From assembly GCF_006345805.1 (NCBI RefSeq), contig NC_043006.1, positions 102,424,001 to 102,488,000 on the forward strand: 64,000 bases of DNA, given 5' to 3'. Origin of the DNA: Octopus sinensis. Lineage: Eukaryota. The notes under the pieces were generated by a model. That model did not search any database and had not been told where the DNA came from. It saw only the letters and a program-made list of their open reading frames with translations. The first letter of the stretch is position 1. Every line of letters begins with the position of its first letter. Shown here one piece after another: positions 22,501-63,983 of the stretch. The position numbers and the translations under genes are program-made.

Positions 22501-23720
22501 TAAGGATATCAGATCGGACTGGAAAACCAACACCAGCCTCTCTGCACTCCTCCTTCTGCCTTTCTTTCCAAAAAAAGGTGTATCCACTTCCTACTTCCTT
22601 AAACTGACCATCACCTTCTATACGAGTCTCTGAAAGTGCAGCTATATCAATTTTATAACAGTTCAGCTCATGAGCAACAAGTGCAGTGCGTCTTTCAGGC
22701 CTGCAATCACTCTTATTGTCCAACAGAGTGTGTTCATTCCAACATGAAATGTTTAAGTTCCGTCCAGATTTTATAGATAAAAGACTCTTTGTTTTTCGAG
22801 CGCAGGGTGGACATCTGTCAGTCGTGCTAAACTAACCAGATATAGAAAGAGAGGCAATTTTTGGTTCACCTTTTCTTGAACCTCCCCGGTCTCCGGGTGA
22901 GCAGTGCCTTCTCCAAATGGAGCTGCTCAGACACCCATGCAGCAACCGAATCCTACCGCTGTCTTGGGCAACAGGGAGACGACTTTATATCTAGCATGGG
23001 CCGCCTACATGCAGGTCGCTGACTACATGCTTCCAACCCGTCAGGTCTGCATGCTTCACCACCTTTCCATTGCCGCAGAACTTCCGAATAAAAAAAAATA
23101 AAAATATATACTAAAAATGAAGAAAATATATACTAAAAATAAGATAAATATATAGAGAAGAAAAGAAAAGAATGCCCATATCGAGCAGAGGTCGGCAATT
23201 CCTGTGCAGAGTTTTAGGTCCAATAAGGCTTGCACAACACCTCATAGACCCTCTCCACTTTATTGACATTATCCAGAGACAAGCCGGAGCAAGATGTCTG
23301 GTGCCAATATGAGTCGCAGGCTCAGAGATGTGGGAGTGCCGTGATCTCTAGCACAAACCAAAGATCCTCAAAATGTCAAATGCCATTCCCTGCATATCTG
23401 GTTTTATATCAGAGAGACCTTCTCCGAGAGACATGCTTTAACAAAAGCTGACGGGCGCCTCACTCCCAGTGGTTTTTCAGCATGCCGGACACCACCCCGG
23501 AATTTTTGTGTACCCGTGCTAACATTTATTGGATGGCCGTTGACTCTCAAGAGGTCCTCCGCCCTTTGACCGGTTTTGTTTTTTATCCTGCAGGGTGTCC
23601 AATAAACACCCTCCTCACCAAGCAAGCTTGGTGGGGTTGCCGGTTTAGTCACCGACGACCCGACCATGCAGCATGTTGTACTGGGTTACATGATACCAGT
23701 AGCACTCGAAAGTGACCTGA
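19560..23720 (-). mobile_element. Full-length RTE-clade non-LTR retrotransposon (APE endonuclease + RT), frameshifted
   Basis: Minus-strand ORF pieces: RPERRTALVAHEL...IAALSETR and ILLGDFSARV...WTDH (APE); YRGIALL, ESQCGF, FIDLTKAFD, GVKQG..LAP.LF, LLYADD, FVYLGS, RLRWTGH (RT and C-terminus). About 0.9-kb 5' UTR. Identical 16-bp flanks TATATATATATAGTAT at 19544-19559 and 23721-23736 (TSD). Confidence 0.93.
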
Positions 23721-28422: not shown

Positions 28423-28666
28423 GACTAGTGAGATTGATGTCATATGATTGATGACTAGTGAGATTGATGTCATTTATGATTGATGACTAGTGAGATTGAT
28501 GTCATATGATTGATGACTAGTGAGATTGATGTCATTTATGATTGATGACTAGTGAGATTGATGTCATATGATTGATGACTAGTGAGATTGATGTCATTTA
28601 TGATTGATGACTAGTGAGATTGATGTCATTTATGATTGATGACTAGTGAGATTGATGTCATTTATG
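28423..28666. repeat. Minisatellite, 8 units of 30/32 bp
   Basis: GACTAGTGAGATTGATGTCAT(TT)ATGATTGAT; unit order 30,32,30,32,30,32,32,partial. Confidence 0.97.
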
Positions 28667-32903: not shown

Positions 32904-33016
32904 ATGGCGGCCTCCATGGTGCGAGGTCGGCTTTGCAGGTGCTTGTTGCGGCGAACGAAACACTTGGAGCCAGGGTTCCCTCACACCTCGGTCCGGAATG
33001 CATCCTACTATGTCTT
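32904..33016 (+). CDS. Exon 1 (MAASMVRGRLCRCLLRRTKHLEPGFPHTSVRNASYYV-L), mitochondrial presequence-like
   Basis: aagATGG start context; donor TT|GTAAGT at 33017; phase 2 joins exon 2. Confidence 0.85.
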
Positions 33017-42800: not shown

Positions 42801-45800
42801 AAAAAAGGGAATTCCTAAATCACACAACTATTCATTTATCTCCTTTAACCCTTTAGTGTTCACATTATTCTGCCAAAACTAACCCTTTTTTATCCACATT
42901 GTTTTGAACTAATCATGCATTATCTTGTAGCTATGAGATTTTGATGAGGAAGCTGTTAATTTTTAGAACGATATTGTAGGGTTGGTGTGAGAGACCAGAT
43001 CTGGCCAGTTTGAACATAAAACAGGCAGAATACTTTTGGCCGGATATGGCCGGTTTAAATGCTAAAGGGTTAATCCTTCAGCACTCAGATTAGTTTGTCA
43101 AATATAAAGCTTATTTATTCACCTTATTTTGAATTAATCCTATATTATCTTGTAGCTTTGTGATTTTGTTTATGGGTTTATTTACTTTTAGTTTGACAAT
43201 TTAGGGTAGGTGTAAGAGGGTGTTTTTGGCCAGTTTGAACATAAATCAAATAAAATATTTTGGCCGGATATGACTGGCTTAACCCTTTGGGATTCAGATT
43301 TCTTTGTGAAATTTATTGCTTATTTAATTCATACTGTTTTGAATTAATCACATATTATTTTGCAACTTTAAAATTTAAATGGTGTGGCTTTATATTTTAA
43401 AAATGACATTGTAGGGTAGGTGTGAGAAGTTGGATCCAGACAGTTTTAACATAAAGCAGGTGGAATATTTGGGCCGGATTAAATGCTAAAGGGTTAAAGT
43501 ATTTATGTATTTATTTACTATTTTCTTCTCTTGTTTTCAGGAAGTGAATGCTGACCGATCTAAATTGGATACCTACCAGCAGCAGTTACTTAATCTTTAT
43601 CTATTAGAAGGCCACTTAAATGGCATTGAGATCAGTGGGTCCAGCCGGAAAAAGTTTATTGATATCTTACGCAAACTAACACGTGAAAGAAATACATTTA
43701 GGTAAAATATACTTCTCACAGTTGCCAAACAAGTTTCTTTGTTCTGCCTCTACCTCCCGTCCTCTCCCCACAGCTTCTGTGCCTCCTTAATGGCCCTTCT
43801 TATTTTTCTCCCATGGCCTAACTCCATGGCCCCTACACCTCTCTCACCTTTGCTGAGTCTCTAATGATTCCTCTATCCTAGTTTACTGTTCCCTACATGT
43901 CCCCTTTCCCCCACATCTTTATATACTTGTCCTTATAATATAGGATAGCCCTAGACCCCTCCACACTACTTACTCTATCCTCCTGCTTTTCTCAATAATC
44001 CTGTCCCTAATCTCTTCCTTCTCTCTCATAGTGGTCAGTCTACAATCCACTATCTTATCAGTTCCTGCCAAACTGTCCAGCCTGCGCAAGCATGAAAACC
44101 TGATGTTAAATGATGATGATGATGATGTCCTTCAACTGTATTTCTTAACCTTCAGCTATCATAATACTCTCTCTCTCTCTTTCGGAGAGGCACTGAGCAC
44201 CTACACACACACATACACACACGGCAGTAACTTCCACCTACCAACTTCAATCACAAAGCTTCGGTCGACTCGGGGCTAAAGCAGAAGACACCTGCCTAAA
44301 GTGCAATAAAGTTAAATCCAGTGAGATGTCTGAAGATGTCTTTGCCCTATTCTAAATGCATACAAACAAGAAATTATATATTTTTAAGTATATTTGGCCT
44401 TCTTTGTAGAAATTAACCGTAAATGAAGATGCTAATTAGTGGCACATAACTGATCCTTGAGAATGTTGCTTGCAAACCTTTCATTTCTCTTTAATTCCTT
44501 TGATTTCTACCCAAAATCCATATTTCTATGTTATTAACATACATGAAACCACTCTTGTTTAATTTTTCATGTTCAAATTAAAACTAATGTCCTTTAAAAT
44601 TTCATTATTATACGAAGGATGATAACTTAAAAAGTTTGCTTGTATTTACATTATAATTGGTATTCAAATTTACCTTAGTATAATACTGAACACACTCTGT
44701 ACTACTTATGACTTGCTTACTTTAAATTGGTGGTTCATAATTGAGGTCCTTATGATCTTTGAAACAATAGAATTTATTTTTGTATGACAGAATAAATTTT
44801 AAGCCAGAGAACATAAATGGAGAAGAGTCTTATATGCATTAAAATAATCAATTGAATAGATACAATATCTCAGATAGCATCAGATGCAATATCTTAAAGG
44901 TTTTGTTCTTTCTCTCTGCATTCTGTGTTCAAATCCCACCCAAATCATATTTGCTTTTCATTGTTATGGGGTTGTTAAAAAGTGTACCAAGAGTGATGGA
45001 TTGGTTGAACTTAAAAAACTTTGGATCAGATACCTTGTTGTATTTGTTCTGAAATTTTGCTTTCTTAGTTCAAATTCCACCATGGCTCACGTGAGTGGTA
45101 GGCTTTAATCCATTGCCTTGTTTGATAACAACACCTGGCATCTTGGGTGCCTTTAGTGAAGACCATTCTGTTGCAAGAATTTATGCTGGGAGAGTTATTA
45201 ACCTGCCGGATAAAATGTTTAGCAGCGTTTCTTCTAACTTTATGTTCTGAGTTCAAATTCTACAAAGGTTATCTTTGCCTTTCATCCTTTCAAAATCGAT
45301 AAAATAAAGTGTCAATTTTGAGCAGTGGGTGGGGGTGGGGCTTCAGTATAATCAACTTGTCTCTGCCCCCCAAATTTCCAGCCTTATGCCTATTGTAGAA
45401 AAAAAACAAACTCATACCAAGTCTCCAGTGTAAAGATATCTATTTCTTTACTGCCCACAAGGGGCTAAACACAGAGAGGACAAACAAAGACAGACAAACG
45501 GATTAAGTCGATTAGATCGACCCCAGTGCGTAACTGGTACTTATTCAATCGACCCCGAAAGGATGAAAGGCAAAGTCGACCTCGGCGGAATTTGAACTCA
45601 GAATGTAACGACAGACGAAATACCGCTGAGCATTTCGCCTGACGTGCTAACGTTTCTACCAACTCGCTGCCATGCCAGTGTAAAGATACCTTCCTCTCTC
45701 TCTCACCTATTTCATGGGGCCCTGTAAAAATTCATGGGTAATGCCTACCATCATTACTTAAAAAAACACATTTTTAAACAATCCTTTATTAAGGTATTAT

Positions 45801-48800
45801 TATATATTTCGTTTTCAATTTGTTCAGGAGCAAAGTGATGGTGTGTCAGAATATGTTTTCTCAGTGGGTCACTGATTACTCTTTTGTCAAAAATATGTCC
45901 CCTGCTATAATATCCATGATGGCTGCTGACAAGTAAGTTGAATTTCTTTGGTTTGGAAACTTTTGGCTAATTTTGTAAATTCTACAGCTATATATATACT
46001 CATTCTTTCAGAACTAGACATCACCTTTCCACAGGTGCAAGCAACTATTATGTGGTGAAGAAGTTCACTTTGAAACCATGTGGTACTGGGTTCAATCTCA
46101 CTGACAGTACATTGTGTGTCTTGTACTCTATCCTCAGATTAATTAATATCTTGTAAGTGAAACTCACAGAAACTATGCAGATGCTCATTGTGTGGGTGTA
46201 CTTATATGCTGTTGGCATGAGAAAATGCTCTGAGTTCACCATGTAGATATAACCAAAATGAGCAGTGTGGCTTTTGTTTATCATCATCATCATCATCATC
46301 GTTTAATGTCCACTTTCCATGCTATCATGGGTTGGACGAATGACTGAGGGCTGGCGAATCAGATGGCTGCACCAGGTTTCAATCTTGCTCTGGCAGAGTT
46401 TCTACAGATGGATGCCCTTCCTAACGCCAACCACTCCGAGAGTGTAGTGGATGCGTTTATGTGCCAGTCAGGCGGTACTGGCAACAACCTTGCTCGAATC
46501 TTTTACACATGCCACCGGCACAGGTGCCAGTAAGGCGATGCTGGTAACAATCACGCTCGAAGGTGTCTTTTACTTGCCACCAGCACAGAGGCCAGATAGC
46601 CGCTCTGGCAATGATCATGCTTGGATGGTGCTCTTTAAGGCGACGCTGGTAACGATCATGCTCGAATGGTTCCTTTTAAGTTCCACTGGCACAGAAGCCG
46701 GTTAGCCGCTCTGTCAATGATCACACTCGTATGGTGCTCTTTGCACCCCGCTAGCACAGATGCCAGTCATCGAATTTGATTTTGATTTTTGATTTAGTAT
46801 AGTGAAAATGTAAGGGTTCCAACATTACATAGATGTATGGTGCCAGTGCCATGTAAGAAGCACCCATGCCAGTGCTACATAAAAGTACCTCTGCTGGTGC
46901 CACGTAAAAGCACCCAGTACACTCTGTAAAGTGGTTGACATTGGAAAGGGCATCCAGCCATAGAAACCCCTGTTAAAACTGACAAGGAATCCAGACAGCC
47001 CATCAGCTGGCCAGCTCCTGTCAAACCATCTAAGCCATGCTAGTATGGAAAACAGACGTTAAATGATGATGATGATGATGATGATGATGTACAATATGAC
47101 TTCTGGTTACCAAAGCCAAAATGTACAATGCAACTTCTATCTAAGATAGTGAAAATGTATAAGATGAGCTCAAGTCTGTTTGGCTGATATGTGCAAAATT
47201 CTCTGTCGTAAGTAAAGCTGAACTGTAATGAATGACCACTAGTTAATATTTTAGGTACTGCCTTGTGGTGTATTTTATTACTGATAAGTACAGAGAATTC
47301 TGACCAAGTCTACGTCACTCTCTGCCACTGTGGCCACCACCATAGACTGTGTGGACATATTAAGACAGACTGGAGTGTTGTGGGGTTAAATATAGCATGT
47401 CTGTACTGCCAAACTGCAGCCTATACAGCAAACCACTGCATGTCAGAGTATGGTTCTCTACTAGATGGTGGTATGGTTTATTTAGAATAACAGAATTATT
47501 GCTTAGGACTAGCTGTTTGATTACCTACCATAGATCTCTGTAATCAAAGCTGGCTTGATGCTAAGCAACAACAGCTAAATGCAATGATTTCTTGCCAAAT
47601 ACTTCTAATATATATATATAATATGATCTGAACTGATACTGTTTAGATGCTCAATATTGATTTGAAACTAATAAGATATAATTGATCTCTTTTATTATTT
47701 GACTTTTACTAATTAAAGCCTGAATCTGATTGATTAGGCCTTCATCAATTAGTTTTAGTGTTGCTTGGTGAGAATACAGCAGACCATGAACTATGTAGAG
47801 AACTTAATATGATATGTGTGTGTATACACAGGCTTCAGCATAATTTCTTTGTGACAAATTTCCCTCACAAGGCATTGGTTACCTGAGGCTTTGATGGCAG
47901 ACACATGTCCAGGGGATCAAACCTAGGGATCTTTTCGGTTTGAACGGCAGTTTTTTCTAGCAGTGTCATATGAAATTGTCACCCATAATTATGACCCTAG
48001 TATCGATCTATTGCATTTCAATCTGTTTTAGGGTTAGGGGTGGGGGGAAGGCTATCTTGTTTTCACAAATGTAAATAAACCCAATCTGCTTCTTAAACGA
48101 GGCACATATTCATACGGCACAGAATGTTGTTTACCTCAATGGACATCAGTGATTGGTTGAAATTGCAGAAATTGAAGAAAAAAACAACAAATATCTTTCA
48201 AACTTTAGAATTTTCTCAATAAAGCCAAGAGAAAAAGATGTTTTATAGACATATTCTACCAGTATACAAAGTTTAAAATTTTTTAGTTACCTAGAAATTA
48301 TGTTAAAAACTGCCGTTCAAACCGAAAAGATCCAAACCTAGAACTGTTGTGTGTGGAAATGAACTTCTTTACTGCACATCCATGTCTATTCACATTTTTC
48401 CATATTTTAAATATTCTTTTTCTTTCAGTTTTTACATAAAGCTTATCACATCACTTTAACTCTAGTTAATTTCATGAACTTTTTCATTCAAATCCTGCTA
48501 CAGTCGACTTTGCCTTTCATCCTTTTGAGATTGATAAAAAATAGTTATCAATCCAGAGTGGTGTATTGGCAGAACTGTCTGAATGTCAGACTAGGTACCT
48601 TGTGGTGTTTGTTTTGGCTATCTACATTTTGATGAGATGCCTAAAAACACCCTGATCAACCCTTAGGACTAGTGGAGTGACTAAAGCAAATCTTCAAAAT
48701 GAAATTCCAACACCAAATAGATGTTACTGAACAAAGTCATGATGCGGTTCCTCCAGTTGGAGAATCAGGTGTTCTAGTCACTTTATTGTTCTTTAATTTA

Positions 48801-50803
48801 CAAATAATTATTTAGAACAGACACAATTATGGTAATATTTTTAGAAAGGCTGATATGTTTTCAGAAAATTTTCATCTCCAGACTAAAAGCCTTACAATAT
48901 TTAGTCTAATCCCTCTATGTTCTAAGTTCAAATTTCCATTGAAACCAATTTAGTTTTTCTTCAGTCCAAAGGCCTAAATTAAGTACCAAAACTGTTTCAG
49001 TAATATATTACAGTACCAGACCAGCTGATTGTAAACTATATTCCTTTCTCAAAAATTGTTGGACTGCTGTTTGGTCTAAAGAAACCATTAAGTGTCCTTG
49101 TAATAATTTTATGTTTAAAAATGAAACTGTATTTCCATTACCAGACAACAACCCAAAGTCGGACCATGGCAAGTCACACTTCAGAGTCAGGTATACCAAG
49201 CATTCCTGGAGCACTGCCACAACCGGACACTTCGTTGGAATGTATGGCAAGCATACAATAGCCGTGCAGGACCAAAGCATCAGGAACGAGATCTTGCGAA
49301 CCACAAAATTATTCATGAAATAAGGCTTCTTCGGTAATATATATAAATACATATATTTATTATAAGATTTTTCTTTTCAGTTGTTGCAATATGTTTGAGA
49401 TGAGAATGAAAAGTGATCATAGAATGGTAAAAAATATTGTAAAATTGTAAGGGCTTTCAGTCAGAGGTAAGACAGACCCTGAGAAGACTTGGAGGAGGTC
49501 ATCATTGAAGTATGTGAAAGATTGAATGCATAACAACATTTTTTGGTTAATGAATCTTAGACTTCTGAAATTTATTAATTTTCATCCAACTTAAAAATTG
49601 TGAAATTTGTTTACTCTCTTTGTTGCACCTCAAAACACAAAGTTGTTGAAATATTTCACTTAAACAAAATTTTAATATTTTTACCTTTTGCTCAATTTAC
49701 CTAGATTTACCTGTAATTAAAGTCACTTTGAGACAAAAGTTATGCAATAGAATTGATTAAGAACCCTTTCTTTAATCATGTTCCAAATATCACATTAATA
49801 TGTTGATAAGTAAAAAAGTTACAGTTATTTAATGAAACAAGCCTAAATTCATGATTATTTTAGAATTTAATTGAAACTCATAAGGGGTGTATTTTGGTCA
49901 GAAATATAGTAATGAAAGGGTTAAGAGCTTCTATCATCATCATCATCATATGTCTGTTTCCCATGCTGGTATGGGTTGGATGGTTTGATAGGAGCTCGCC
50001 AGCTAGAGAGCTATCCAAACTCCAATTGTCTCTCATGGCATGGTTTCTACAGCTGGATGCCCTTCCTAATGCCAGCCACTTTACAGAGTGTGCTGGGTGC
50101 TTTTTATGTGCCACCACCAAGAGTGCGTTTTATGTGGCACCAGCACCTGTAAAGGATAAGCCTGTATGTATGGCAGTGATCTTACTTGTCTTCTCAAGTA
50201 CAGCAAATTACCACTATTCCATGGCCTTTAGAATTAAGTAATTTTTAAAATATTTTTTTACATATTAAAATACACCACTACCACCACTGTCTCATCTTAA
50301 TGGACATTTTTCTATGAGTGTATGGGCCAGACAGAAATGAGGCTGAATTCTGTCATCAATCCTCATCCATATTCTATCAGTTTTATGAATATACCAGCCT
50401 GATCTAGCCTCTCACATCTACCCTACAATGTCATTCTAAAAATAAACAATCACATCTTCAAAATTTCAAAGCTACAAGATAATGCATGATTAATTCAAAA
50501 CAATATGAATAAATATGTCTTGCATTTGACAGAGTAATCTGAATGCTAAAGGATTAGATTAACTATATCATTCTTACATGATCAGTGTGGAATGTCAGTT
50601 TTCAGGATATTGGGTCTCAAAGACTAGATGACGTAGGTGTAAGAGGACTGACAGGGTGCTACGGCTGAATATTGTGGGCCTGTCCAACCTTGTGCAGCAT
50701 TGGAAAATAGACATAGAAATAATAATGATGGTAGTTAAGAAAGTAATGGCAAATATCTAAATTTGCAAAACTAACCTAAAAAATTGGATTTAATACTGTT
50801 CAG

Positions 50804-51503: not shown

Positions 51504-54500
51504 ATTAATTAATGAGAGGGATGGAAGATGTAATATACGAGAATCTTTATTAATCGCTACAATTGTTTGGACCCATCTAGTATCGATCCCTCACAGGTAG
51601 GATGCTGCTGTGAATGTGCTTTACTGGCAAACTACCTGGTGTATACCATACAGCTTATTAACTACTAACTATATATATATAAATATTTGTTTTGTGTTTG
51701 TTTCTGTCATTGTCCTAAACATTCGCTTGCCATTCCCAACAGCTTCTCTCTGTTCACCATTGAAATTGTAAGGATTTTGGGGATAACTGTCAAGGAAATG
51801 GCAGTGTCCGCTCTTGGCTGTGAATTTTCCATTTGTTTTTTTGTTGTATTTCTGTTTAATTTTTGGAACTTATTATAAAACTTATTTCTCCAGTTTTATT
51901 TATAAAGAACTGTTTTTTCTTTTCTATTTCTTGCAGACAGGACATTGCTGACATTTTAGGGTATAATAGCTTTGCTCATATGTCTATGGAGACCAAAATG
52001 GCAGGATCTGTAGAGAATGTGCTCACTATGTTAGAAACGTGAGTTCCATACATATACCGATTTTCTTTATTCTTTATTCTCTTACTTGTTTCAATCATTG
52101 CACTGTGGACATGCTGGGGCATCAGTTTTGAAGAGTTTAGTTGCCATAATTCATTCTCTACATATTTTCAAGTTTGGTATTTATTATTTTGGTTTCATTT
52201 TGCCAAATGACCAAGTTACATGGATGTAAATGGAAAAGAGAAACAAAACACTATATTCCAGCTAAAAATAAAAGTATTTTAAGAAATCAAAAAATATCAA
52301 GTAGCTTCTATTATGGTCTCAAGAAGGCTCTGGAATTTGGCACATGCGTTCCTCACTGTGTCCCTGGGAAGATCTACAAACACCTCCTTCATCTTGGCCC
52401 ACCAGCTCGGCCTTGATGTTGCTGGCAAACTGGTTGGTGTTTTTCTCAACTGCACCCTACACATAGTAATTGGGATAACAATCAGAGGGAATTAGAAGGC
52501 CAGAAATTGGGGCTGGAGAGGCCATAGAAAATCTTCAACAACTACTTCTGTGAAAGTATGCAAGGAGCCAGATTCTGTTGCCTTCCAACAGCATCCATCT
52601 TCAGTCAGGGTTTGACAACAGTCTCCAGCAGCTTCACGTAGCTGTCTGAATTGAGCTTAAGACCTTGTTCAGAGATGTGGGGATGGATTCCCGTGTGCAG
52701 GTGTAGTCAAATGCCTGGTGTGTGTGTTCCTGCTGGCCACAGCTTCATAGTCATCATTGCAGCAGTCGTGATGTTGGCATTTTGATAGTTACGTACAAAT
52801 CATCATGACACAGGTAATCTTTTCCAATATTTAGAAAGCTTCCAGCTCTCCATGTCAGTTACCTTTTTCTTAATTACAACTTCAATATTTATGCTTCACT
52901 GTCGTTCCCTGTTCACCAATACATCAAGCTGTTTCTGAAAAAAAAAAAAAAAGACATAAAATTTGTCAAATTTAGCTTGATCATCCCATATAAATATATG
53001 AATTTTTTTAGTTTTCATTATTATTATTATTTATTTGTCTGTTTGTTTAGATATAAAAATCATTTTAAACCTATTGCTAAAGAAGAATTAGAAGAGTTGC
53101 AGGATTTTGCTGTTTCTGAAGGCTTTCCCCATGAGTTACAGTGTTGGGATGTTCCTTACTGGAGAAGGATACACAAAAACCAGTATTATGGGTGAGTAGA
53201 ATTACAAATACACTTTCTCTATTTTCTTTGTGGCTGCAAGTAATTTATTTTTCATAGTTAGGTTACATGAGACGTGTAGAATGAAGAATCTTGGTCCAAA
53301 CTCAACAAAATCCCTTTAGTTTCACTTCCCAGTCCACACTAAGTACTTTTTGCCTATCTTTCCTCCCCACTACTACTATACTCTAGAAATCCCTCTTTGG
53401 TTTTTCCGTGCCAGTGGCACGTAAAAGGGCTCCAGTCGAGCCTGATTGTTACCAAAGTTGCCTTACTGGCACCTGTGTTGGTGGCATGTGTAAAAGGATT
53501 CGAGCAAGGTTGTTGCCAGTACCGCCTGACTGGCCCCCCCGTGCCGGTGACACATAAAAATCACCCACTACACTCTTGGAGTGGTTGGCACTAGGAAGGG
53601 CATCCAGCTGTAGAAACACTTCCAAATCAAGATTGGAGCCTGGTGCAACCACCTGGTTCACCAGCCCTCAGTCAAAATCGTCCAACCCATGCTAGCATGG
53701 AAAGCAGACGTTAAAAGATGATGATGATGATGTTAACCAGGTGTTCTGATGTTGAATCTGAAAACCTAGCACTCCTTGTTCATGTACATCATATGTCCAT
53801 AGCAGTACAAATTCCTCTCCTGCATACATAAAATGCTCTCTTATTTATGACCTACTTTCCATGCAAATTGATGTTATATTTCCAATAGACTTTGTTTGCA
53901 CCATTTCTCTCTGGCCCTTCTACATTCAGCTGCCCATGTCTCACTACGTTGAAGTATATTTCTACATTAATGGCTATGTGGATGTAGGTTCACATATGGT
54001 TCTATAGTTAAGCATTGTGAGTGGATATAGTTGACAGAAAATGAAAGAAGCCTGTTGTATGTGTGTCTGTGTTCATGCATGAGTATGTTTGTGTCTCCTT
54101 ATCTTGACATTACATGCAAATTGTAAGCAGCATCAGTTGTTTGCAATCTTCCAAGTAAATGTACTGTTTACATTCAAAAGACTAGGGGCAAATGTTTCCT
54201 TATTTGGAAACAGGAGAGGTTGGTGTTAGGAGCAGCATAGGGTGGTTGAAAATCTTGTCTCACTGAGTTTCCTCTAACTCATGCAAGCATGGTGGAATAG
54301 TAGACATTGAAATGATGATGATGATGATGATGATTTCTGTAAATTTCCTAAAATATGTCTTTACCATTTTATATTTCTGTGTTTATCCAGCATCAATGAA
54401 AGCCAGATAGCTCAATATTTCCCATTGTCTCATGTTTTGAATTCTCTCTTCAAGTTTTGTGAAAAACTTTTTGGAATTACAATCAAGGTTTGTGAACAGT

Positions 54501-57500: not shown

Positions 57501-60500
57501 AGGAGTACAGTCCTTGGGTACGTCCATAGGGGCCAATCAGAAGCAACCTTCATTAGACCTGGTTGGATTCCCAAGCATGACCAGCTGAGACAATGGATTT
57601 ACCTCTGGGTCTCCTGCTGGTTGGCTCAGTTTGAAAAATCTGTCTTGTAATTCTTTCCTGTGAAATTCTAATTGCATGTCCGTAGTGCCAAAGCTGTGAC
57701 CTTTCAATGTGGGGAAATGGTAATTCATCCTGGAGAGAGCCCCTGACCCCAGACATTACACCCTTTTGAGTAATGTTATTGCTGAGATTCTTCAGAGGAA
57801 TATTCTTTATTACTCTAGGCACGAGGCCTGAAATTTCTGGGGAGCGGGACAGTCGATTAGATTGACTCCAGTACGTAACTGGTACTTAATTTATCGACCC
57901 CAAAAGAATGAAAGGCAAAGTTGACCTCGGTGGAATTTGAACTCAGAATGTAAAGACAGACGAAATATGCTAAGCATTTTGCCCAGTGTGCTAACGTTTC
58001 TGCCAGCTCACCACCTTCCTTCAGAGGAATATTAAGAGAAAGAAAATTTGGTTCAGTTTTTCAAACCTTAGAATTTATTTTCTACCAAAATTTAGAGCTG
58101 GATTTTTTTTTTTTACTTTAAAAAGATTTTTTATTCTGTACAACAGGATGAATCTGATCAAAATGACAATTCACTGCCAGATGTGAAACTGTTTGGTGTT
58201 TATGATGAAAAAGGTAAGAATTTTTTTTGTCTATTATGGTTTATGATTTTTGTGTGTGTATTTTTTAAGATATCACCAATTACCAGCCACTGCATAAAAA
58301 TTGATGTCAGAGTGCTCTCCCCTCTCTACCACAAATTCTTTTTCAACACTTGATTTCCTCCAAATAGTTTTGTAAACATTGGCGTTGCTCGGGTTTGTAA
58401 GGGAAATAACTATATAAGCACTTTTAGAGAGTTATAGCCCAAAAATAGCAAAAAAATGCATTAAAAATGGAAAAAAATTATGGTAATTTTTTTTTAAATC
58501 GTTGACTCATCATAGACATTTTTAGAGAGTTACTTCCCTTATATAATAGCGAAAAAATGCATTAAAATGGAAAAAAATGATGGTAAATTTTTTTTTAAAT
58601 CGTAGACTCATCGTAGTCGCACGCTAATACCCAGAAGGGCTCGATATGAATCACGACTATAAGATACCCGGTTTTGGTTAAACTGCACCGCAAAATGTGG
58701 GAGTAGTTAGGAATCTAAATCATAGGAGACAGACAGACACACAACTTGACTTTTATATAAAAACATATATAGGGAAAGTGGGAAACTGTGCATCTGAATG
58801 TATTGAATTTAATAAATATTGTATTGAGCCATATTGAACACTTTATATCTGGATTAGTCGTGTCTTGATATTCTGAATTCAATTCCTTTCCGAGCAAGTA
58901 CTTATCAGCAATATATTGGAAACCATATCTATTTACACTTCATCCTTCAAACAACAAAATGACATTACGAGTAAATAAAAATAACCTTTTTATTGAAGCA
59001 TAGTGTAACAGAAGTCGTCCCCTGAAATGTCATTGTGCATCTGCATCTGAACGTGCTTTGAGCATCCAAGTGATGTTGGAGGGACAAACACAGACACACA
59101 CACATATATATACATATATACGACGGGCTTCTTTCAGTTTCCGTCTACCAAATCCACTCACAAGGCTTTGGTCGACTTGAGGCTATAGTAGTAGAAACTT
59201 ACCCAAAGTGCCATGCAGTGGGACTGAACCCAGGACCATGTGGTTGGTAAGCAAGCTGCTTACCACACAGCCACTCCTGTGCCATGTAAGGAACAAATGG
59301 TATAAACTTCGTCGGCGAGCTGGCAGAATCGTTAGCACGCCAGGCAAAATGCTTAGCGGTATTTCGTCTGCGTTACGTTGTGAGTTCAAATTCCGCCGAG
59401 GTCGACTTTGCCTTTAATCCTTTCGGGGTCGATAAATTAAGTACCAGTTACGCACTGGGGTCGATGTAATCGACTTAATACCTATGTCTGTCCTTGTTTG
59501 TCCCCTCTGTGTTTGGCCCCTTGTGGGTAATGAAGAAATAGGTATAAACTTCATCCTGTGTTTATCATCTTTATCCTATATATCATAACCAGTAATATTA
59601 CTGAATACAGTTAAACAGCAAGCTGGCAGAACTGTTGGCAAATTGCTCTGAGGCATTTCATTTGTTTTTATATCCGAGGATGACTTTGCCTTTCAATCTT
59701 TGGGGATTGATAAAATTAGTAACAGTTGAACACTGGGGTAGATATAATCGATTTACATTTTCCCCCTAACTTGCTGACAGAATTGTTACCACATTGGACA
59801 AAATGCTAAGTGGCCTTTCGTCCATTTTATGTCCAGAGTTCAAATTCTGCCGAGGTTGACTTTGCCTTTCATCCTTTAGGGGTTGATAAAATAGGTACTG
59901 CTCGAACACTAAGGTCGATATAATCGATTTACACCCTCCCCTGAACTTGTTGGCAGTATTGTTACTGTGTCAGGAAAAATGCTTAGTGGCATTTCATCCG
60001 TTTTACCTTCAGAGTTCAAATTTTGCTGGGGTCAACTTTGTTGTTCATCATTTTAGGGTTGATAAAATAGGTAATACTTGAACACTGGTGTCGATCGATA
60101 TAATCAATTTACACCCTTCCCTGAACTTGCTGGCCTTGTGCCAAAATTTGAAACCAAGGATTGTCACTGCACCAAACAAGCTAGTTAGCAGCATACATCA
60201 TCTTCAAATTCCATCAAGGTACACTTTGCCCTTTGGGTGGAGTCAATGAAATAAGTACCAGTCAACTACTGGAGTCGATGTAATCAACTTAACCCCTTCC
60301 TGAAACTGCTGTCCTTGTGCCAAAATGTTAAACCAATATTACTAAATGTTGCTGACTGGCACCATTTGAGTGTGATCGTTACCAGCATTGCCTTACTGGC
60401 ACGTGAAGAAACATTCAAGCGAGGTTGTTGTCAGTGCCGCTGGACTGGCTCCTGCGCAGGTGGCATGTAAAAAACACCATTTGAACGTGGCTGTTGCCAG

Positions 60501-63500
60501 TACTACCTGACTAGCCCTTGTGCCGGTGGCACGTAAAAGCACCCACTACACTCTCAGAGTGGTTGGTGTTAGGAAGGGCATCCAACTGTTGAAACTCTGC
60601 CATATCAGATTGGAGCCTGGTGCAGCCATCTGATTTGCCAGTCCTCAGTCAAATCGTCCAACCCATGCTAGCATGGAAAGTGGACGTTAAACAATGATGA
60701 TGACAGAAGTAACCACACTAGTTTACTGGAAGCAGACTGATAGGTGATATTCTATGCGGAGCTATAAATTCACCAGTAGTAGTCATAGATTTAACTCTTT
60801 AGCATTTAAAGCAGCTGTATTCAGCTAAGACGTTCTACGTTCAAACTGGCCAGATCTGGCTTCTTACACCAACCCTACAATGTCATTCAAATAATTCAGT
60901 TACCTCATCAACATCTTGAAGCTACAAAACAAGGCTTGATTAACTCCAAACAATGTGAATAAATAAACATTCCGTTTAACAGAACAGTATGAATGCTAAA
61001 GAAATGTTAGATTGAAACTACTTCATTTTCAAATTATTTCTATTTTCTTTTTTTTCCAGGTGAATACAGAGCATCTTTCTTTTTCGACCCCTATGCCCAT
61101 CAAGGTAAAATGAGTGGAACATGGATGGAAATTGGTCGAGGTGAGATTCATTACATCGCTATTGTTTCTAAATTAGATTCTTTAATAAATTCATATTTTA
61201 CTTATTTCAGTCATTAGGCTGTGGCCATGCTAGGGCACTGCCTTGAGGAATTTTAGTTGAATTAATCAACCCCAGTACTTTTTCTCCTTTTTTTAAAGCC
61301 TGCTGCTTATTCTATTGGTCTCACTTGCTGAACTGCTAGGTTGTAGGGAAGTAAACACCAGCGCCGGTTGTCTGTTGGTGGGGGGGGGCAAACACAGACA
61401 CATAATGGACTTCTTTCAGTTTTTGTCTACCAAATCCACTCACAAGGCTTTGGTTGGCTTGAGGTTATAGCAGAAGATACTTGCCCAAGGTGCCACACCT
61501 TGGGATTGAACCCAACACTATATGGTTGAGAAGCAAACTTCTTACCATGGGACCAAGATGATAAAAAAAAAATTAATGTTCTCAGTGGATACCTTTTTTT
61601 TTCAACCCTTCCTTGATACCAACCTTAAGAAGTCTACTAGTAAATGTGACCGAGTTAGACCTGCACTGGACTCTTCACATTCTTAAGATTGCCAAAAAGG
61701 CCAAAGATGTTTCAGTAAAACGGTAGATGGCTGCTTGCCCCCTATTCCATGGCTGTGGTACATCCACCTTTAGTTTATCTTGCCAGTCTGGAACCCCATT
61801 TCGTCCAGAATAGGAATCAATTTTAGAAGCTCTCCAGAGACATGCAATCAGACAAATACTCTCGGTCAATCACAATATCTTGAATGTTATTAACGCTCAA
61901 TGTGTCATGGCCCATGTAGTATGCCTCATGTGTTGCAGTCTGCATGTTGTAATATATGTGTTGTGCAAACCTGTTTTAAGTTATAATAATTCCTCTAGAC
62001 ATTAAATTTAATCAATAAATTAATTAGTTTATCTTTAATCTTTCAGAGCGAAGTGATTTACATGGCGTGAAACCATTTTCTTATTTGGTGCTAAACCTTC
62101 ACAAACCACTTGTGCCCAGTATACCAACTCTTATGACACTTCAGGAAGTCCATATGTTGTTCTCAGAGGTATTGACAGTTTATCTTTAACCCAGCCCTGT
62201 ATTCTAATATCAGTTCATTACTCAGTTCATTTGCAGGTGCTGTCAAGGGATTGATTCATGCCAACACGGGTTAGGTGGTTTGACCAGGGCTGACAAGCTG
62301 GAGAGCTGCACCAGGTTCCAGTCTGATTTGGCCTGGTTTCTACAGTTGGGTGCCCTTCCTAACACCAGCCACTTTACAGAGTGTGCTGCGTGCTTTTTAC
62401 ATGCCATCATTGACCTTTCATTCAAGTGTGTGTTAGTGTGGATACAGCGTAGCTAAGAAGTTCACTTCGCAACCACGTGGTCCCACAAAATCACTTGCCT
62501 CAGGTCAAACCAAATCTTGAGTGAAATTGGGTTGACAGAAACTGTGGGGAAACCCATCAAATATATTGTACCTATAATTCAGGGGTACCTATAATTCAGA
62601 GGTACCTATAATTCAGGGGTACCCATAATTCAGAGGTACTTTTGTGTCATGCACTGTATCATGCTGATTCTGCCTAAGGATTATGTTAAGGATATACATG
62701 TCTGTGGAATACTCAGCCACTCATTAATTCTATGGGTGGGTAATTCATTTGAGTGACTGAATCCTCACTGTCAAAACCAACAGAGATCCATTTACTTACT
62801 TATATGTGTGGTGTGAGTTAGTTAGTTAGTTAGTTAATTATTTGGCTTAAAAAGCAAAAAGCAAGGCCATGTAGGGGAACATGGAGTTATGTACAGGGTG
62901 GTGTTCATGTAAAGAGTTCAGGCCACTTGTGGTCAAGGGAGACTTTGAACCGAGTGGTCATCGGCATCTTCACTATCTCGTCTGGCAGCTTTAATCATTA
63001 ACTAAATTATCAATCAGATGTATGCTTTGCTTCCATTTTGTTTTACCCTTTTATGACTGCAACCACTGTTTATTGTGTGACAGGTAAGGGCATGTCTGAG
63101 GTGGTGAGCTGGCAGAAATGTTAGCACGCCGGGCGAAATGCATAGCCGTTACGTTCTGAGTTCAAATTCCGCCGAGGTCGACTTTGCCTTTCATCCTCTC
63201 GGGGTTGATAAACTAAGTACCAGTTACGCACTGGGGTCGATGTAATCGACTTAATCCCTTTGTCTGTCCTTGTTTGTCTCTTCTGTGTTTAGCCCCTTGT
63301 GGGTAGTCAAGAAATAGGTAAGGACATGTCTCCTTGGCGTCTGTCCCTCTAGGACAGTGGTTCTCAACCAAACGCCATAAGATTGTGGGTCCTATAAGAT
63401 TTGTGGAGAAGGGGGTCCACACAAGAAAAATCGTAAATTGGGTCCACAGTTGTAATTTATGAGTCCATGAAAAAATTTTGCTTTAGGTGTATTCATTGCA

Positions 63501-63983
63501 AGAAGCAGCTACGTTTCTTTCTCTGACATTTTACATAATACAACCTACACAAGTAATTGTGTGATCAACAAAATAGGAATTTTGAAAGAAGTATCTATGA
63601 AACTAGTTTTTAAATGGCTATGGGGGTCCACCTGAATAAAATAGTAATAATCTGGTTGTGAACCACTGCTTTGGATGGAGTTTTTAAAAAAATGGTCTTC
63701 TTCTTAGAAATGAAACTGTTTATAATGATAATGATATTTGTCATATTTCCTTGATAAATTCATTCTGTTTTATTCCAGTTTGGTCACGGTCTACAACAAA
63801 TGCTAACTACAGTTCCATACAGTGAGATAGCAGGTCAAAGAAATGTGGAATGGGATGCACTTCATGTCTGCTCCAGTTTCATGACCATGTGGCTATCTGA
63901 TGCACGTACCCTGAAAAGTTTAACATCTCACTATCAGACAGGTGAACCCATGCCCGATGAAATGGTGGACACACTTCTTAAAG
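32904..63983 (+). CDS. Spliced gene (14 coding exons in window, 3' incomplete): M3A family oligopeptidase A-like protein, probably mitochondrial, with degenerate zinc site
   Basis: Exons 32904-33016, 36612-36775, 39040-39179, 41686-41754, 43541-43701, 45828-45932, 49145-49333, 51937-52038, 53051-53191, 54391-54487, 58147-58213, 61060-61140, 62047-62168, 63779-63983 all have GT-AG boundaries and compatible phases (1756 nt, 585 codons, no stop). Motifs GPWQVTL, ILGYNSFAHMSMETKMAGSVENV, WDVPYW, YFPL, FFDPYAHQGKMSGTWM, EFGHGL, VEWDA and HYQTGEP match the OpdA/PrlC-type M3A architecture. Family recognised from memory. Confidence 0.93.
33135..33240. repeat. Imperfect ~21-bp tandem repeat in intron 1
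   Basis: GCATCT(A/C/G)AGGGTGT repeated four times. Confidence 0.8.
36612..36775 (+). CDS. Exon 2 (LPEIPPDT...NHLEQLK)
   Basis: tttcag acceptor, G|GTTTGT donor, 164 nt, phases fit both neighbours. Confidence 0.9.
36920..37640 (+). mobile_element. Decayed RTE RT fragment in intron 2, interrupted by a 165-bp insert
   Basis: LEKAFGRV, QGLVLSPLLFIVVLQA, WEPLYAD remnants. Confidence 0.65.
38608..38840 (-). mobile_element. SINE family B (intron 2)
   Basis: Reverse complement of the 28883-29115 type. Confidence 0.85.
39040..39179 (+). CDS. Exon 3 (DPQMEKTF...ESFQR)
   Basis: ctttag acceptor, AGA|GTAAGT donor, 140 nt. Confidence 0.92.
41686..41754 (+). CDS. Exon 4 (IHSQVDQAKNERWISEPLYNAVK)
   Basis: ttttag acceptor, AAG|GTAAGT donor, 69 nt, phase 0/0. 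Confidence 0.92.
41920..42400 (+). mobile_element. Decayed RTE LINE C-terminal fragment (intron 4)
   Basis: VFRSLVL.VLLY..TW.L...LNSFTTRTLCRIMG. Confidence 0.6.
42560..42740 (+). mobile_element. 3' end of a Jockey/L2/CR1-group LINE
   Basis: RTLTYNYVQSFLPRTLTLWNLLP.CVFP...DLQLFKQSINK terminal motif. Confidence 0.55.
42849..43493. mobile_element. Three adjacent piggyBac-type MITEs sharing TTAA sites
   Basis: TTAA at 42845, 43070, 43279, 43494; first unit has intact CCCTTTAG...CTAAAGGG TIRs. Related solo copies near 34055, 50390, 56765, 60792. Confidence 0.75.
43541..43701 (+). CDS. Exon 5 (EVNADRSK...ERNTF-R)
   Basis: ttttcag acceptor, AG|GTAAAA donor, 161 nt. Confidence 0.92.
45440..45675 (-). 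mobile_element. SINE family B (intron 5), 14-bp TSD
   Basis: TSD CCAGTGTAAAGATA on both sides. Confidence 0.9.
45828..45932 (+). CDS. Exon 6 (SKVMVCQN...MMAAD-K)
   Basis: tgttcag acceptor, AA|GTAAGT donor, 105 nt. Confidence 0.88.
49145..49333 (+). CDS. Exon 7 (QQPKVGPWQVTL...HEIRLL-R)
   Basis: ttaccag acceptor, CG|GTAATA donor, 189 nt; GPWxVTL and YNSRA motifs of M3A peptidases. Confidence 0.93.
51135..51371 (+). mobile_element. SINE family B (intron 7), 13-bp TSD
   Basis: TSD TATCCAACCAACA at 51122 and 51372. Confidence 0.9.
51937..52038 (+). CDS. Exon 8 (QDIADILGYNSFAHMSMETKMAGSVENVLTMLE-T)
   Basis: ttgcag acceptor, AC|GTGAGT donor, 102 nt; LGYxxFA...KMA motif. Confidence 0.95.
53051..53191 (+). 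CDS. Exon 9 (YKNHFKP...WDVPYWRRIHKNQYY-G)
   Basis: gtttag acceptor, GG|GTGAGT donor, 141 nt; WDxxYW motif. Confidence 0.95.
54391..54487 (+). CDS. Exon 10 (INESQIAQYFPLSHVLNSLFKFCEKLFGITIK)
   Basis: atccag acceptor, AAG|GTTTGT donor, 97 nt; YFPL...LFGI motif. Confidence 0.93.
57495..57760 (-). mobile_element. Decayed RTE LINE C-terminal fragment (intron 10)
   Basis: IERSQLWHYGHAIRI..ERITRQI....PTSRRPRG. Confidence 0.6.
57805..58018 (-). mobile_element. SINE family B variant (intron 10), TSD
   Basis: TTCAGAGGAATATT repeated on both flanks. Confidence 0.8.
58147..58213 (+). CDS. Exon 11 (DESDQNDNSLPDVKLFGVYDEK-G)
   Basis: caacag acceptor, G|GTAAGA donor, 67 nt; PDVxxFxVYD motif. Confidence 0.88.
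58381..58760 (-). mobile_element. Helitron-like element, same family as 16052-16351, with internal duplication and clipped 3' end
   Basis: Reverse-complement match to 16060-16340; the aaaaaatgcattaaaa...aaatcgt segment is repeated. Confidence 0.65.
59311..59540 (+). mobile_element. SINE family B (intron 11), 12-bp TSD
   Basis: TSD GGTATAAACTTC at 59299 and 59541. Confidence 0.9.
61060..61140 (+). CDS. Exon 12 (EYRASFFFDPYAHQGKMSGTWMEIGR-E)
   Basis: tttccag acceptor, G|GTGAGA donor, 81 nt; corresponds to OpdA FYLDxYAR.GKRGGAWM. Confidence 0.94.
62047..62168 (+). CDS. Exon 13 (RSDLHGVKP...EVHMLFSE)
   Basis: tttcag acceptor, GAG|GTATTG donor, 122 nt; ends at the Glu of the degenerate HEXXH. 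Confidence 0.92.
62568..62639. repeat. 17-bp minisatellite x4
   Basis: GTACCTATAATTCAG(G/A)G with alternating GGG/GAG ends. Confidence 0.93.
63100..63315 (+). mobile_element. SINE family B (intron 13)
   Basis: Full head and tail; near-TSD AGGTAAGG..CATGTCT. Confidence 0.85.
63355..63668. mobile_element. hAT MITE in intron 13
   Basis: TIRs CAGTGGTTCTCAACCA / TGGTTGTGAACCACTG; TSD degenerate. Confidence 0.7.
63779..63983 (+). CDS. Exon 14 (FGHGLQQML...VEWDALHVCSSFM...HYQTGEPMPDEMVDTLLK)
   Basis: ttccag acceptor, G|GTAATC donor, 205 nt; the gene continues beyond the window. Confidence 0.95.

What the first reader, a model, noticed from the sequence alone, without database searches (positions are those of the whole stretch)
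62163..63865. M3A peptidase with a rewired zinc site: HEXXH becomes SEFGH and the third ligand Glu becomes His (probable pseudopeptidase)
Splicing exon 13 to 14 gives ...MLFSE|[9 protein letters not shown]...[13 protein letters not shown]. Active OpdA-type enzymes read LFHEFGHGLHHML...WDAVELPSQFM. The first zinc His is Ser516 (TCA, 62163-65). The catalytic Glu517 and second His520 remain. The third ligand, 26 residues after that His, is His546 (CAT, 63863-65) instead of Glu. The other 585 codons are open, splice sites are clean and structural motifs are kept, so this is a maintained gene, not a pseudogene. A-to-I editing cannot restore either residue. Inference: a catalytically dead mitochondrial peptide-binding or scaffold protein, or less likely a re-arranged Glu/His/His metal site.
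Basis: partly seen in the sequence, partly recalled or inferred. Interest (0 to 1): 0.75.

Follow-up and report, generated by a model that had tools for sequence, protein, structure and literature searches.

The report
Catalytically dead oligopeptidase A, protostome-wide
This octopod gene is an intact, strongly conserved copy of a bacterial-type peptide-cutting enzyme that has lost the residues needed to cut, and the same loss is found in 107 of the 108 protostome sequences compared (molluscs, annelids, arthropods), pointing to an old and apparently undescribed non-enzymatic role.

Summary
Exon 13 (62047-62168) ends ...HMLFSE and exon 14 (63779-63983) begins FGHGLQQ...[12 protein letters not shown]. 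The first zinc histidine is therefore Ser516 (TCA 62163-65) and the third zinc ligand is His546 (CAT 63863-65).

The window holds 14 clean GT-AG exons, 585 codons. They align without gaps to the Argonauta hians orthologue, which has the same Ser and His codons. dN/dS is about 0.05 overall and about 0.01 around the former active site. A third cephalopod has SEFGH in assembled mRNA. No alternative HEFGH exon exists in the window.

Of 108 protostome orthologues, 107 lack at least one of the four zinc or catalytic residues; only Priapulus keeps all four. All 25 cnidarian, echinoderm, hemichordate, amphioxus and bacterial relatives keep all four. Lophotrochozoans lost the third ligand. Arthropods replaced the catalytic Glu with Lys or Arg. 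These are two independent losses after a shared shift in the protostome stem.

The fold is predicted to be fully retained. The N-terminus looks like a mitochondrial presequence. I found no description of an M3-family pseudopeptidase in the literature. The function is unknown; my best guess is a non-hydrolytic binding or regulatory protein in mitochondria.

The parts
32904..33016 (+). Exon 1: ATG and basic N-terminal extension (MAASMVRGRLCRCLLRRTKHLEPGFPHTSVRNASYYV...), a putative mitochondrial presequence
   Evidence: tblastn with the Argonauta orthologue P0016. Donor GT. 7 K/R against 1 D/E in 37 residues.
36612..36775 (+). Exon 2 (start of the mature protein, LPEIPPDT...)
   Evidence: AG/GT
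39040..39179 (+). Exon 3 (TOP_N domain)
41686..41754 (+). Exon 4
43541..43701 (+). Exon 5
45828..45932 (+). Exon 6
49145..49333 (+). Exon 7 (start of the Peptidase_M3 domain)
51937..52038 (+). Exon 8 (LGYNSFAHMSMETKMAGSV, the most conserved block in protostomes)
53051..53191 (+). Exon 9
54391..54487 (+). Exon 10
58147..58213 (+). Exon 11
61060..61140 (+). Exon 12
62047..62168 (+). Exon 13, ending ...HMLFSE. Ser516 (TCA 62163-65) replaces the first zinc His. The catalytic Glu517 (GAG 62166-68) is kept. A phase-0 intron follows the Glu codon.
63779..63983 (+). Exon 14, FGHGLQQ...[12 protein letters not shown]...LLK. His520 (second zinc His) is kept. His546 (CAT 63863-65) replaces the third-ligand Glu. 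The gene continues beyond the window; about 138 codons are missing.

Best explanation
The window carries the first 14 exons of the octopod orthologue of the animal OpdA/OOP-type M3A gene. This is the bacterial-type oligopeptidase A whose plant homologue OOP degrades targeting peptides inside organelles.

In protostomes this orthologue has become a pseudopeptidase.
- Shown: a burst of substitutions shared by all protostomes, Priapulus included, came first (for example P501C, G610A, F595H and loss of the Gly-Gly loop, E. coli numbering).
- Shown: the catalytic machinery was then dismantled at least twice independently. The third zinc ligand Glu was lost in the lophotrochozoan stem (mostly to Gln; His in octopods). 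The catalytic Glu was replaced by Lys/Arg in the arthropod stem.
- Shown: further lineage-specific erosion followed. In cephalopods the first zinc His became Ser, and the two substrate-positioning Tyr became His.
- Shown: the protein keeps the whole two-lobed clamshell fold (predicted), remains under strong purifying selection, and is transcribed.

Inferred: it no longer binds zinc in the canonical way and does not hydrolyse peptides.

Inferred, less securely: it is imported into mitochondria through its basic N-terminal presequence. There it would use the conserved former substrate cleft to bind, without cutting, a peptide or a partner protein. It would then act as a binding, regulatory or scaffolding factor, as other mitochondrial pseudopeptidases do (alpha-MPP, complex III core proteins).

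The confidence given (0.8) is for the core claim: a selectively maintained, catalytically inactive orthologue. The specific binding or regulatory role in mitochondria is much less certain, about 0.35.
For: - Sequence and gene model.
- Family membership: Pfam PF01432 E = 2.1e-78 and PF19310. The best PDB sequence matches are Arabidopsis OOP 4KA8 and CYOP 4PUT.
- Catalytic positions: 107 of 108 protostome sequences lack at least one of His, Glu, His, Glu. All 25 bacterial, cnidarian, hemichordate, echinoderm and amphioxus sequences keep all four.
- Pattern of loss: lophotrochozoans have lost the third-ligand Glu; arthropods have Lys/Arg at the catalytic Glu; Priapulus keeps the full set.
- Orthology: in a neighbour-joining tree protostomes are monophyletic in 100/100 bootstraps and animals in 98/100. 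The tree broadly follows the species tree. Protostome distances to bacterial OpdA are about twice those of the active animal proteins, 1.4 against 0.76.
- No active paralogue: a search with the coral enzyme returned no protostome protein among the 120 best hits, although deuterostomes appear there at 56-60% identity.
- Selection: omega about 0.05 against Argonauta, about 0.007 for residues 500-585.
- Transcription: intron-less contigs in 17 assemblies for P0017.
- Fold: AF2 model of the Argonauta orthologue has pLDDT 89.9 and pTM 0.86. TM-scores are 0.90 to 4PUT, 0.91 to human TOP and 0.82 to OOP.
- Substrate contacts: Nln His601, Tyr606 and Tyr613 contact the substrate backbone (PMC11310207). 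Their Argonauta equivalents are His, His, His. Across protostomes they are retained in only 9%, 31% and 7% of sequences.
- Presequence-like N-terminus across the family: median 5 K/R against 0 D/E.
Against: - No biochemical data exist. Loss of activity is inferred from residues only.
- Several lophotrochozoans still have HEFGH with Gln as the would-be third ligand, and Priapulus has the full set, so residual or complete activity in some lineages cannot be excluded.
- Octopods keep Glu517, His520 and a new His546, which could in principle hold a metal.
- The C-terminal quarter of the window's own protein lies outside the window. Its residues are inferred from the 87%-identical Argonauta orthologue.
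- Mitochondrial location rests on composition only; no predictor or experiment was available.
- dS is near saturation (pS 0.65), so omega is approximate. True dS is if anything larger, and omega smaller.
- The tree is neighbour-joining only and places Priapulus outside Lophotrochozoa + Arthropoda.
- Many cleft residues that are invariant in active enzymes have also changed, so 'still binds peptides' is a guess.
Confidence: 0.8

Rival explanations
1. Rewired but functional metallopeptidase. Glu517, His520 and the new His546 (perhaps with another residue) hold a metal ion, and the protein still hydrolyses peptides.
For: The catalytic Glu and the second His are kept, and a potential ligand (His) sits at the third-ligand position in the window and in Argonauta. 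The surrounding helix and loop are extremely conserved (omega about 0.007).
Against: The third-ligand position is Tyr in two other cephalopod sequences (P0017, P0001). In other lophotrochozoans it is Gln, Arg, Pro or Ala. No His/His/Glu set is therefore under selection. The first-His position varies freely across protostomes (H, Q, Y, S, L, R, F and others). The Tyr equivalents of Nln Tyr606 and Tyr613 are His in cephalopods. The Gly-Gly hinge of the catalytic loop is Asp-Gln.
Confidence: 0.08
2. Decaying pseudogene, or an annotation or assembly artefact. The Ser and His codons would be errors or neutral decay in a dying gene.
For: Two catalytic residues are missing. The window's own species has no transcript evidence in the tools used.
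Against: There are 14 exons with canonical splice sites and no stop or frameshift in 585 codons. The alignment to Argonauta is gap-free, with identical TCA and CAT codons in an independent assembly, and omega is about 0.05. A third cephalopod has SEFGH in mRNA. The family is conserved across protostome phyla.
Confidence: 0.02
3. An alternative, mutually exclusive exon supplies an active HEFGH version in some transcripts.
For: The HEXXH motif is split by an intron (Glu | Phe). The 1.6-kb intron 13 could in principle hide an exon.
Against: A six-frame scan of the whole window finds five HExxH strings, none in an M3-like context. tblastn with exon 13, exon 14 and the coral catalytic segment finds each only once. 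An alternative exon 13 could not restore the third ligand, which lies in exon 14. Orthologues in Argonauta and P0017 read SEFGH.
Confidence: 0.01

Closest known systems
Arabidopsis organellar oligopeptidase OOP (At5g65620; PDB 4KA7/4KA8) and cytosolic CYOP/TOP2 (PDB 4PUT)
   Same: Best sequence matches among solved structures (E about 1e-21 for the 108-residue catalytic segment). Same two-lobed fold, TM 0.82-0.90 over about 700 residues for the Argonauta orthologue model. Same domain pair TOP_N + Peptidase_M3. An N-terminal targeting extension, as in OOP.
   Different: OOP has HEFGH plus Glu and the GGY...YY.Y loop and degrades 8-23-residue peptides (as stated in PMC9291397). The octopod protein has SEFGH plus His. 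Its Argonauta orthologue has DQH...YY.H. Identity is only about 32%.
E. coli oligopeptidase A (OpdA/PrlC) and the cyanobacterial M3 metallopeptidases
   Same: Homologous over the full length (30-33% identity) and collinear. The active-site helix and the EWD loop can be aligned residue for residue.
   Different: The bacterial enzymes keep all catalytic residues. Cnidarian and deuterostome orthologues are 53-54% identical to the cyanobacterial enzymes. The protostome proteins are about twice as divergent.
Active animal OpdA-type orthologues (Acropora, Nematostella, Saccoglossus, Strongylocentrotus, Branchiostoma)
   Same: Same gene by phylogeny: animals are monophyletic in 98/100 bootstraps. They share the TTVPYS motif and a basic N-terminal extension.
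   Different: They keep HEFGH, Glu, His601 and all the Tyr residues. 78 of the 208 columns that are at least 95% conserved in active proteins are retained in under 50% of protostome proteins.
Mitochondrial pseudopeptidases of family M16: alpha-MPP and the complex III core proteins
   Same: A functional analogy only. These are inactive homologues of a zinc peptidase that are kept in mitochondria for binding or scaffolding (review PMC11266112).
   Different: A different family and fold (M16, HXXEH). They act as partners of an active paralogue. No active OpdA-type partner was found in protostomes. No interaction data exist for the M3 protein.
Neurolysin and thimet oligopeptidase (M3A, vertebrates)
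   Same: Same fold (TM 0.89-0.91). Neurolysin is partly mitochondrial. Its substrate-contact residues could be mapped onto this family.
   Different: A different M3A subfamily (about 20% identity). These are active enzymes.

Membership tests
Peptidase family M3, subfamily M3A, OpdA/OOP type (homology) | Significant match to the Peptidase_M3 domain (PF01432) plus the TOP_N domain (PF19310) | tested here: met
   PF01432 E = 2.1e-78, profile positions 1-313 of 457 (cut by the window end). PF19310 E = 1.3e-12.
Peptidase family M3, subfamily M3A, OpdA/OOP type (homology) | Two-lobed all-helical clamshell fold with a five-stranded sheet | tested here: met
   Tested on the 87%-identical Argonauta orthologue. 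pLDDT 89.9; TM 0.90 to 4PUT and 0.91 to 1S4B. Not tested on the window's own truncated product.
Active oligopeptidase A / OOP (EC 3.4.24.70-type zinc peptidase) | HEXXH motif: two zinc-binding His and the catalytic Glu | tested here: not met
   The window reads S-E-F-G-H. The first His is Ser516.
Active oligopeptidase A / OOP (EC 3.4.24.70-type zinc peptidase) | Third zinc ligand Glu, 25-26 residues after the second His | tested here: not met
   His546 aligns to E. coli Glu499 and to the Glu of OOP WDAVELPSQFM.
Active oligopeptidase A / OOP (EC 3.4.24.70-type zinc peptidase) | Substrate- and transition-state-positioning residues of the C-terminal loop (Nln His601, Tyr606, Tyr613; GGY..YY.Y) | tested here: inconclusive
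   This part of the gene lies beyond the window end. In the Argonauta orthologue the residues are His643 (kept), His649 and His656 (both Tyr to His), and GG is DQ.
Active oligopeptidase A / OOP (EC 3.4.24.70-type zinc peptidase) | Zinc content and peptide hydrolysis | not testable with these tools
   Needs recombinant protein.
Pseudopeptidase (inactive enzyme homologue maintained by selection) | Essential catalytic residues replaced | tested here: met
   Two of three zinc ligands are replaced in the window. 107 of 108 protostome orthologues lack at least one of the four residues.
Pseudopeptidase (inactive enzyme homologue maintained by selection) | Intact reading frame under purifying selection | tested here: met
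   585 open codons. Omega about 0.05 against Argonauta. The family is conserved across protostome phyla.
Pseudopeptidase (inactive enzyme homologue maintained by selection) | Expressed | tested here: inconclusive
   The cephalopod orthologue P0017 lies on 17 intron-less transcript-like contigs. No transcript data for the window's own species.
Mitochondrial matrix protein | Cleavable N-terminal presequence | tested here: inconclusive
   37-residue extension with 7 K/R and 1 D/E, ending in a conserved ...VRNASYYV motif, and predicted disordered in the Argonauta orthologue. No targeting predictor or experiment was available.

The most novel reading that the evidence does not exclude
All protostomes (or at least Lophotrochozoa and Arthropoda) carry, in place of the organellar oligopeptidase of other animals, a pseudoenzyme that I infer from its phylogenetic spread to be more than 500 million years old. 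Its new, non-catalytic function arose in the protostome stem, before the catalytic centre was dismantled. The zinc site was then destroyed convergently by different first hits: the third ligand in Lophotrochozoa and the catalytic Glu in Arthropoda, with Priapulus as a living intermediate. This would be the first pseudopeptidase clade of family M3 and a natural series for studying how an enzyme turns into a non-enzyme. It would also mean that database names such as 'probable cytosolic oligopeptidase A' are functionally wrong for hundreds of invertebrate genomes.
Probability: 0.6. Interest if true: 0.6.

Novelty: new member of a known kind. Interest (0 to 1): 0.5.

Why it matters
- **A new pseudopeptidase family.** Pseudoenzymes are an established category, but a 2024 review of inactive metallopeptidase homologues lists none from family M3. 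A 2022 survey of OOP evolution does not mention inactive animal members. A conserved, phylum-spanning M3 pseudopeptidase would add a new family to that catalogue.

- **Annotation.** These genes carry names such as 'oligopeptidase A' or 'probable cytosolic oligopeptidase A' in mollusc, annelid, crustacean, chelicerate and insect genomes. Those names imply an activity the proteins most probably lack.

- **Mitochondrial peptide turnover.** Protostomes would lack the OOP branch of organellar peptide clearance and would have to rely on other peptidases.

- **Enzyme-to-pseudoenzyme evolution.** Independent dismantling in two superphyla, plus an apparently intact intermediate in Priapulus, gives a tractable test case for whether a new function precedes loss of catalysis.

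Tried and rejected
- **Alternative exon.** A six-frame HExxH scan, plus tblastn with exon 13, exon 14 and the coral catalytic segment, found nothing else in the window.
- **Structured RNA or tRNA genes.** ARAGORN and Rfam at gathering thresholds returned 0 hits. The tRNA-like stretch in intron 13 is a repeated SINE-like element, not a gene.
- **Literature.** 'oligopeptidase A' plus 'pseudoenzyme' gave 0 papers. 'Probable cytosolic oligopeptidase A' gave 3 papers, all incidental proteomics lists. The pseudopeptidase review and the OOP evolution paper say nothing about inactive M3 members. A tick midgut proteomics paper uses 'pseudoprotease' only for S01 homologues.
- **First protein search.** The 108-residue catalytic segment returned mostly single-exon fragments, because of the word index.
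- **Pseudogene or assembly error.** Considered and rejected on the Argonauta codons and on omega.
- **A new Cys/His metal site.** The protostome-specific conserved residues (Cys at E. coli position 501, His at 90 and 595) suggested this. I could not test it, because the structure tool returns no coordinates, and I do not claim it.
- **Tools left unused.** I did not run the exhaustive representative-protein search or the cluster look-ups. They carry no taxon names cheaply enough to add to the picture.
Full report
**1. What is in the sequence**

The window is AT-rich animal DNA with short exons and long introns. At the reported coordinates exon 13 ends ...CAT ATG TTG TTC TCA GAG, followed by the donor GT at 62169. 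Exon 14 begins after the acceptor AG at 63777-78 with TTT GGT CAC GGT CTA CAA CAA. Spliced, this reads ...[43 protein letters not shown]...

HMMER alignment to Arabidopsis organellar oligopeptidase (4KA8) and E. coli OpdA puts four residues as follows:
- Ser516 (TCA 62163-65) on the first His of HEFGH;
- Glu517 on the catalytic Glu;
- His520 on the second His;
- His546 (CAT 63863-65) on the third zinc ligand Glu (E. coli Glu499).

**2. Gene model**

I took E. coli prlC from a public record as a yardstick. I then used the best full-length homologue, Argonauta hians P0016 (723 aa, 87% identical), to locate the exons. There are 14 exons on the + strand from 32904 to 63983. Every one is flanked by AG and GT. 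Together they give 585 codons plus one base, with no stop.

The alignment to the Argonauta protein has no gap over these 585 residues. The gene runs off the window, and about 138 C-terminal codons are missing. Pfam recognises TOP_N (E = 1.3e-12) and Peptidase_M3 (E = 2.1e-78, truncated at the window end).

A scan of the whole window found no second copy of exon 13 or 14 and no HExxH string in an M3-like context. An alternative 'active' exon is therefore not available here.

**3. It is real and it is maintained**

The independent Argonauta genome assembly has TCA, GAG, CAT and CAT at the four positions.

Nei-Gojobori comparison of the 585 codon pairs gives dN = 0.072 and pS = 0.65 (dS about 1.5, close to saturation). 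Omega is therefore about 0.05 or less. For residues 500-585, the former active-site helix and loop, dN is 0.015 and omega about 0.007. That is the most constrained part of the protein measured.

A third cephalopod protein (P0017, 74% identical) is carried by 17 intron-less 2-5 kb contigs. The three I read come from Logan assemblies of sequencing runs, and I interpret these contigs as mRNA. It reads LFSEFGHG...WDALYICS. A fourth cephalopod-like genomic fragment (P0001) reads the same.

Pseudogene, assembly error and alternative splicing are thus all poorly supported.

**4. The loss is clade-wide**

A search with a draft of the protein returned full-length homologues from these groups:
- gastropods, bivalves, a chiton and cephalopods;
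- annelids, a nemertean and a priapulid;
- chelicerates, a myriapod, crustaceans and many insects.

Aligned to E. coli OpdA, almost none has the full catalytic set. Counting the four positions His-Glu-His-Glu, 107 of 108 protostome sequences lack at least one. Only Priapulus caudatus has all four.

A search with the one sequence that looked active, which turned out to be a coral, returned orthologues from cnidarians, hemichordates, echinoderms and amphioxus at 56-81% identity, followed by cyanobacterial enzymes at 53%. All 25 of these non-protostome sequences have HEFGH, the third Glu and (where complete) the loop HIF-GGYAAGYYSYKW. No protostome protein appears among the 120 best hits of that search. 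I therefore see no sign of an active OpdA-type paralogue in protostomes.

**5. How it was lost**

A neighbour-joining tree (686 columns, 49 taxa, 100 bootstraps) gives these supports:

| Clade | Bootstrap support |
|---|---|
| Animals | 98/100 |
| Protostomes | 100/100 |
| Lophotrochozoa | 100/100 |
| Arthropoda | 97/100 |
| Cephalopods | 100/100 |

The tree broadly follows the species tree, so these are orthologues. Mean distance to the bacterial enzymes is 0.76 for active animal proteins, 1.13 for Priapulus, and 1.4 for molluscs, annelids and arthropods.

The catalytic positions tell a stepwise story:
- Every lophotrochozoan has lost the third ligand (Gln in most; His, Arg, Pro, Ala or Tyr in others), while many still have HEFGH.
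- Arthropods almost always have Lys or Arg in place of the catalytic Glu (71 of the 108 protostome sequences; a few have Thr, Asn or Gln). Most insects and crustaceans keep the third Glu.
- Priapulus keeps all four residues and all the tyrosines.

The first hits therefore differ between the two superphyla, so inactivation happened at least twice.

All protostomes, Priapulus included, nevertheless share derived states that are absent from active proteins:
- Pro501 to Cys in ELPSQ;
- Gly610 to Ala;
- Phe595 to His;
- loss of the Gly-Gly hinge.

Of the 208 alignment columns that are at least 95% conserved in active proteins, 78 are retained in fewer than half of the protostome proteins and 67 in at least 90%. 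I read this as a functional shift in the protostome stem that relaxed selection on catalysis, followed by independent decay of the catalytic centre. The order of events is an inference from parsimony on a distance tree.

**6. Other catalytic features**

In human neurolysin the substrate backbone is held by His601, Tyr606 and Tyr613 (PMC11310207). The equivalents in the Argonauta orthologue are His643, His649 and His656. The Gly-Gly preceding them is Asp-Gln. Across protostomes these three residues are retained in 9%, 31% and 7% of sequences. So the substrate- and transition-state-positioning side chains have gone as well as the zinc site. For the window itself this region is beyond the end of the sequence.

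**7. Fold and location**

AlphaFold2, using a 47-sequence alignment, models the Argonauta orthologue with mean pLDDT 89.9 and pTM 0.86. Only residues 1-42 are disordered.

Foldseek against the PDB gives these target-normalised TM-scores over about 680-700 residues:

| Structure | TM-score |
|---|---|
| Arabidopsis TOP2 (4PUT) | 0.90 |
| Human thimet oligopeptidase (1S4B) | 0.91 |
| Neurolysin (1I1I) | 0.89 |
| OOP (4KA7/4KA8) | 0.82 |

The whole clamshell is kept.

The window's N-terminal 37 residues have 7 Lys/Arg and 1 Asp/Glu. They end in a ...VRNASYYV motif that recurs across lophotrochozoans. The family median for the N-terminal extension is 5 basic residues against 0 acidic. This is what a mitochondrial presequence looks like, but no predictor or experiment was available, so the location is inferred.

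**8. What it most likely does**

- Shown: an intact, expressed, strongly constrained orthologue of an organellar oligopeptidase that lacks the residues needed for zinc binding and catalysis.
- Inferred: it is catalytically dead.
- Inferred more weakly: it acts in mitochondria as a non-hydrolytic binder or regulator using the former cleft. Within protostomes the most conserved blocks are still those that build the cleft: residues 321-345, 521-545, 651-670 and 686-720.

The 'rewired Glu/His/His metal site' idea is unlikely to describe a selected feature. The third-ligand residue differs even among cephalopods, and the first-His position varies freely.

**9. Comparison with what is known**

By descent the protein is a member of family M3A of the OpdA/OOP type. 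It fails the defining catalytic features of the active enzymes. It fits the definition of a pseudopeptidase.

A 2024 review of inactive metallopeptidase homologues lists M12, M14, M15, M16, M24 and M41 examples but none from M3. The 2022 survey of OOP evolution does not mention inactive animal members. Targeted text searches found nothing else. MEROPS may flag such sequences automatically as non-peptidase homologues; that is my own knowledge and I did not check it.

I therefore rate this a new member of a known kind. The specific observation on the octopod gene is correct but is one instance of a much wider pattern that appears to be undescribed.

**10. Limits**

- No activity, metal or localisation data exist.
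- The tree is distance-based.
- dS is near saturation.
- The C-terminal quarter of the window's protein was not seen.
- The window's species has no transcript evidence here.
- Taxa such as nematodes, flatworms and brachiopods were not sampled among the listed hits.

Noticed in passing
window 19634-22831, minus strand: Degraded non-LTR retrotransposon (LINE), about 10 kb upstream of the gene. Open segments match Exo_endo_phos_2 (21866-22402) and RVT_1 (20621-21550) but are broken into several frames.
   Followed up: partly
window 12853-13131, minus strand: A second, short reverse-transcriptase fragment (RVT_1, E = 1.7e-07).
   Followed up: partly
window 28957, 38727, 45561, 51211, 57906, 59382, 59836, 63158 (39-nt core; both strands): Eight copies (0-3 mismatches) of a SINE-like element with a tRNA-like head (…GAGTTCAAATTCCGCCGAGGTCGACTTTGCCTTTCATCC…). 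Seven lie in the gene's introns, including intron 13 between the two altered codons; the copy at 28957 lies upstream of exon 1. ARAGORN and Rfam call no tRNA there. A 176-bp tandem array of related sequence lies at 59674-60134.
   Followed up: partly
window 62568-62639 (intron 13): A 17-bp tandem repeat, GTACCTATAATTCAGAG x 4.2 copies, 92% matches.
   Followed up: no
window 17063-17332, 347-526, 8331-8446, 28423-28666: Microsatellites and minisatellites: (GATG)n 67 copies, (TA)n 92 and 58 copies, and a 32/62-bp minisatellite. The GATG array produces long spurious open frames on both strands.
   Followed up: no
Family alignment (E. coli OpdA positions 501, 90, 595, 610): New residues that are near-fixed in protostomes only: Cys two residues after the former third ligand (74%), His at position 90 (91%), His at 595 (80%) and Ala at 610 (93%). 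Whether the new Cys and His residues cluster in space, as a possible new site, could not be checked because the structure tool returns no coordinates.
   Followed up: no
This indicates that the phase-0 intron splitting HEXXH between Glu and Phe is conserved across many lophotrochozoans.
   Followed up: partly
(Foldseek ranking): The AF2 model of the Argonauta orthologue is closer to 4PUT, 1S4B and 1I1I (target-normalised TM-score 0.89-0.91) than to the peptide-bound structures 4KA7, 5LUZ and 8VJU (TM 0.81-0.83). From memory, the first three are open and the latter three closed conformations, which would make this an open clamshell. It may only reflect the predictor.
   Followed up: no
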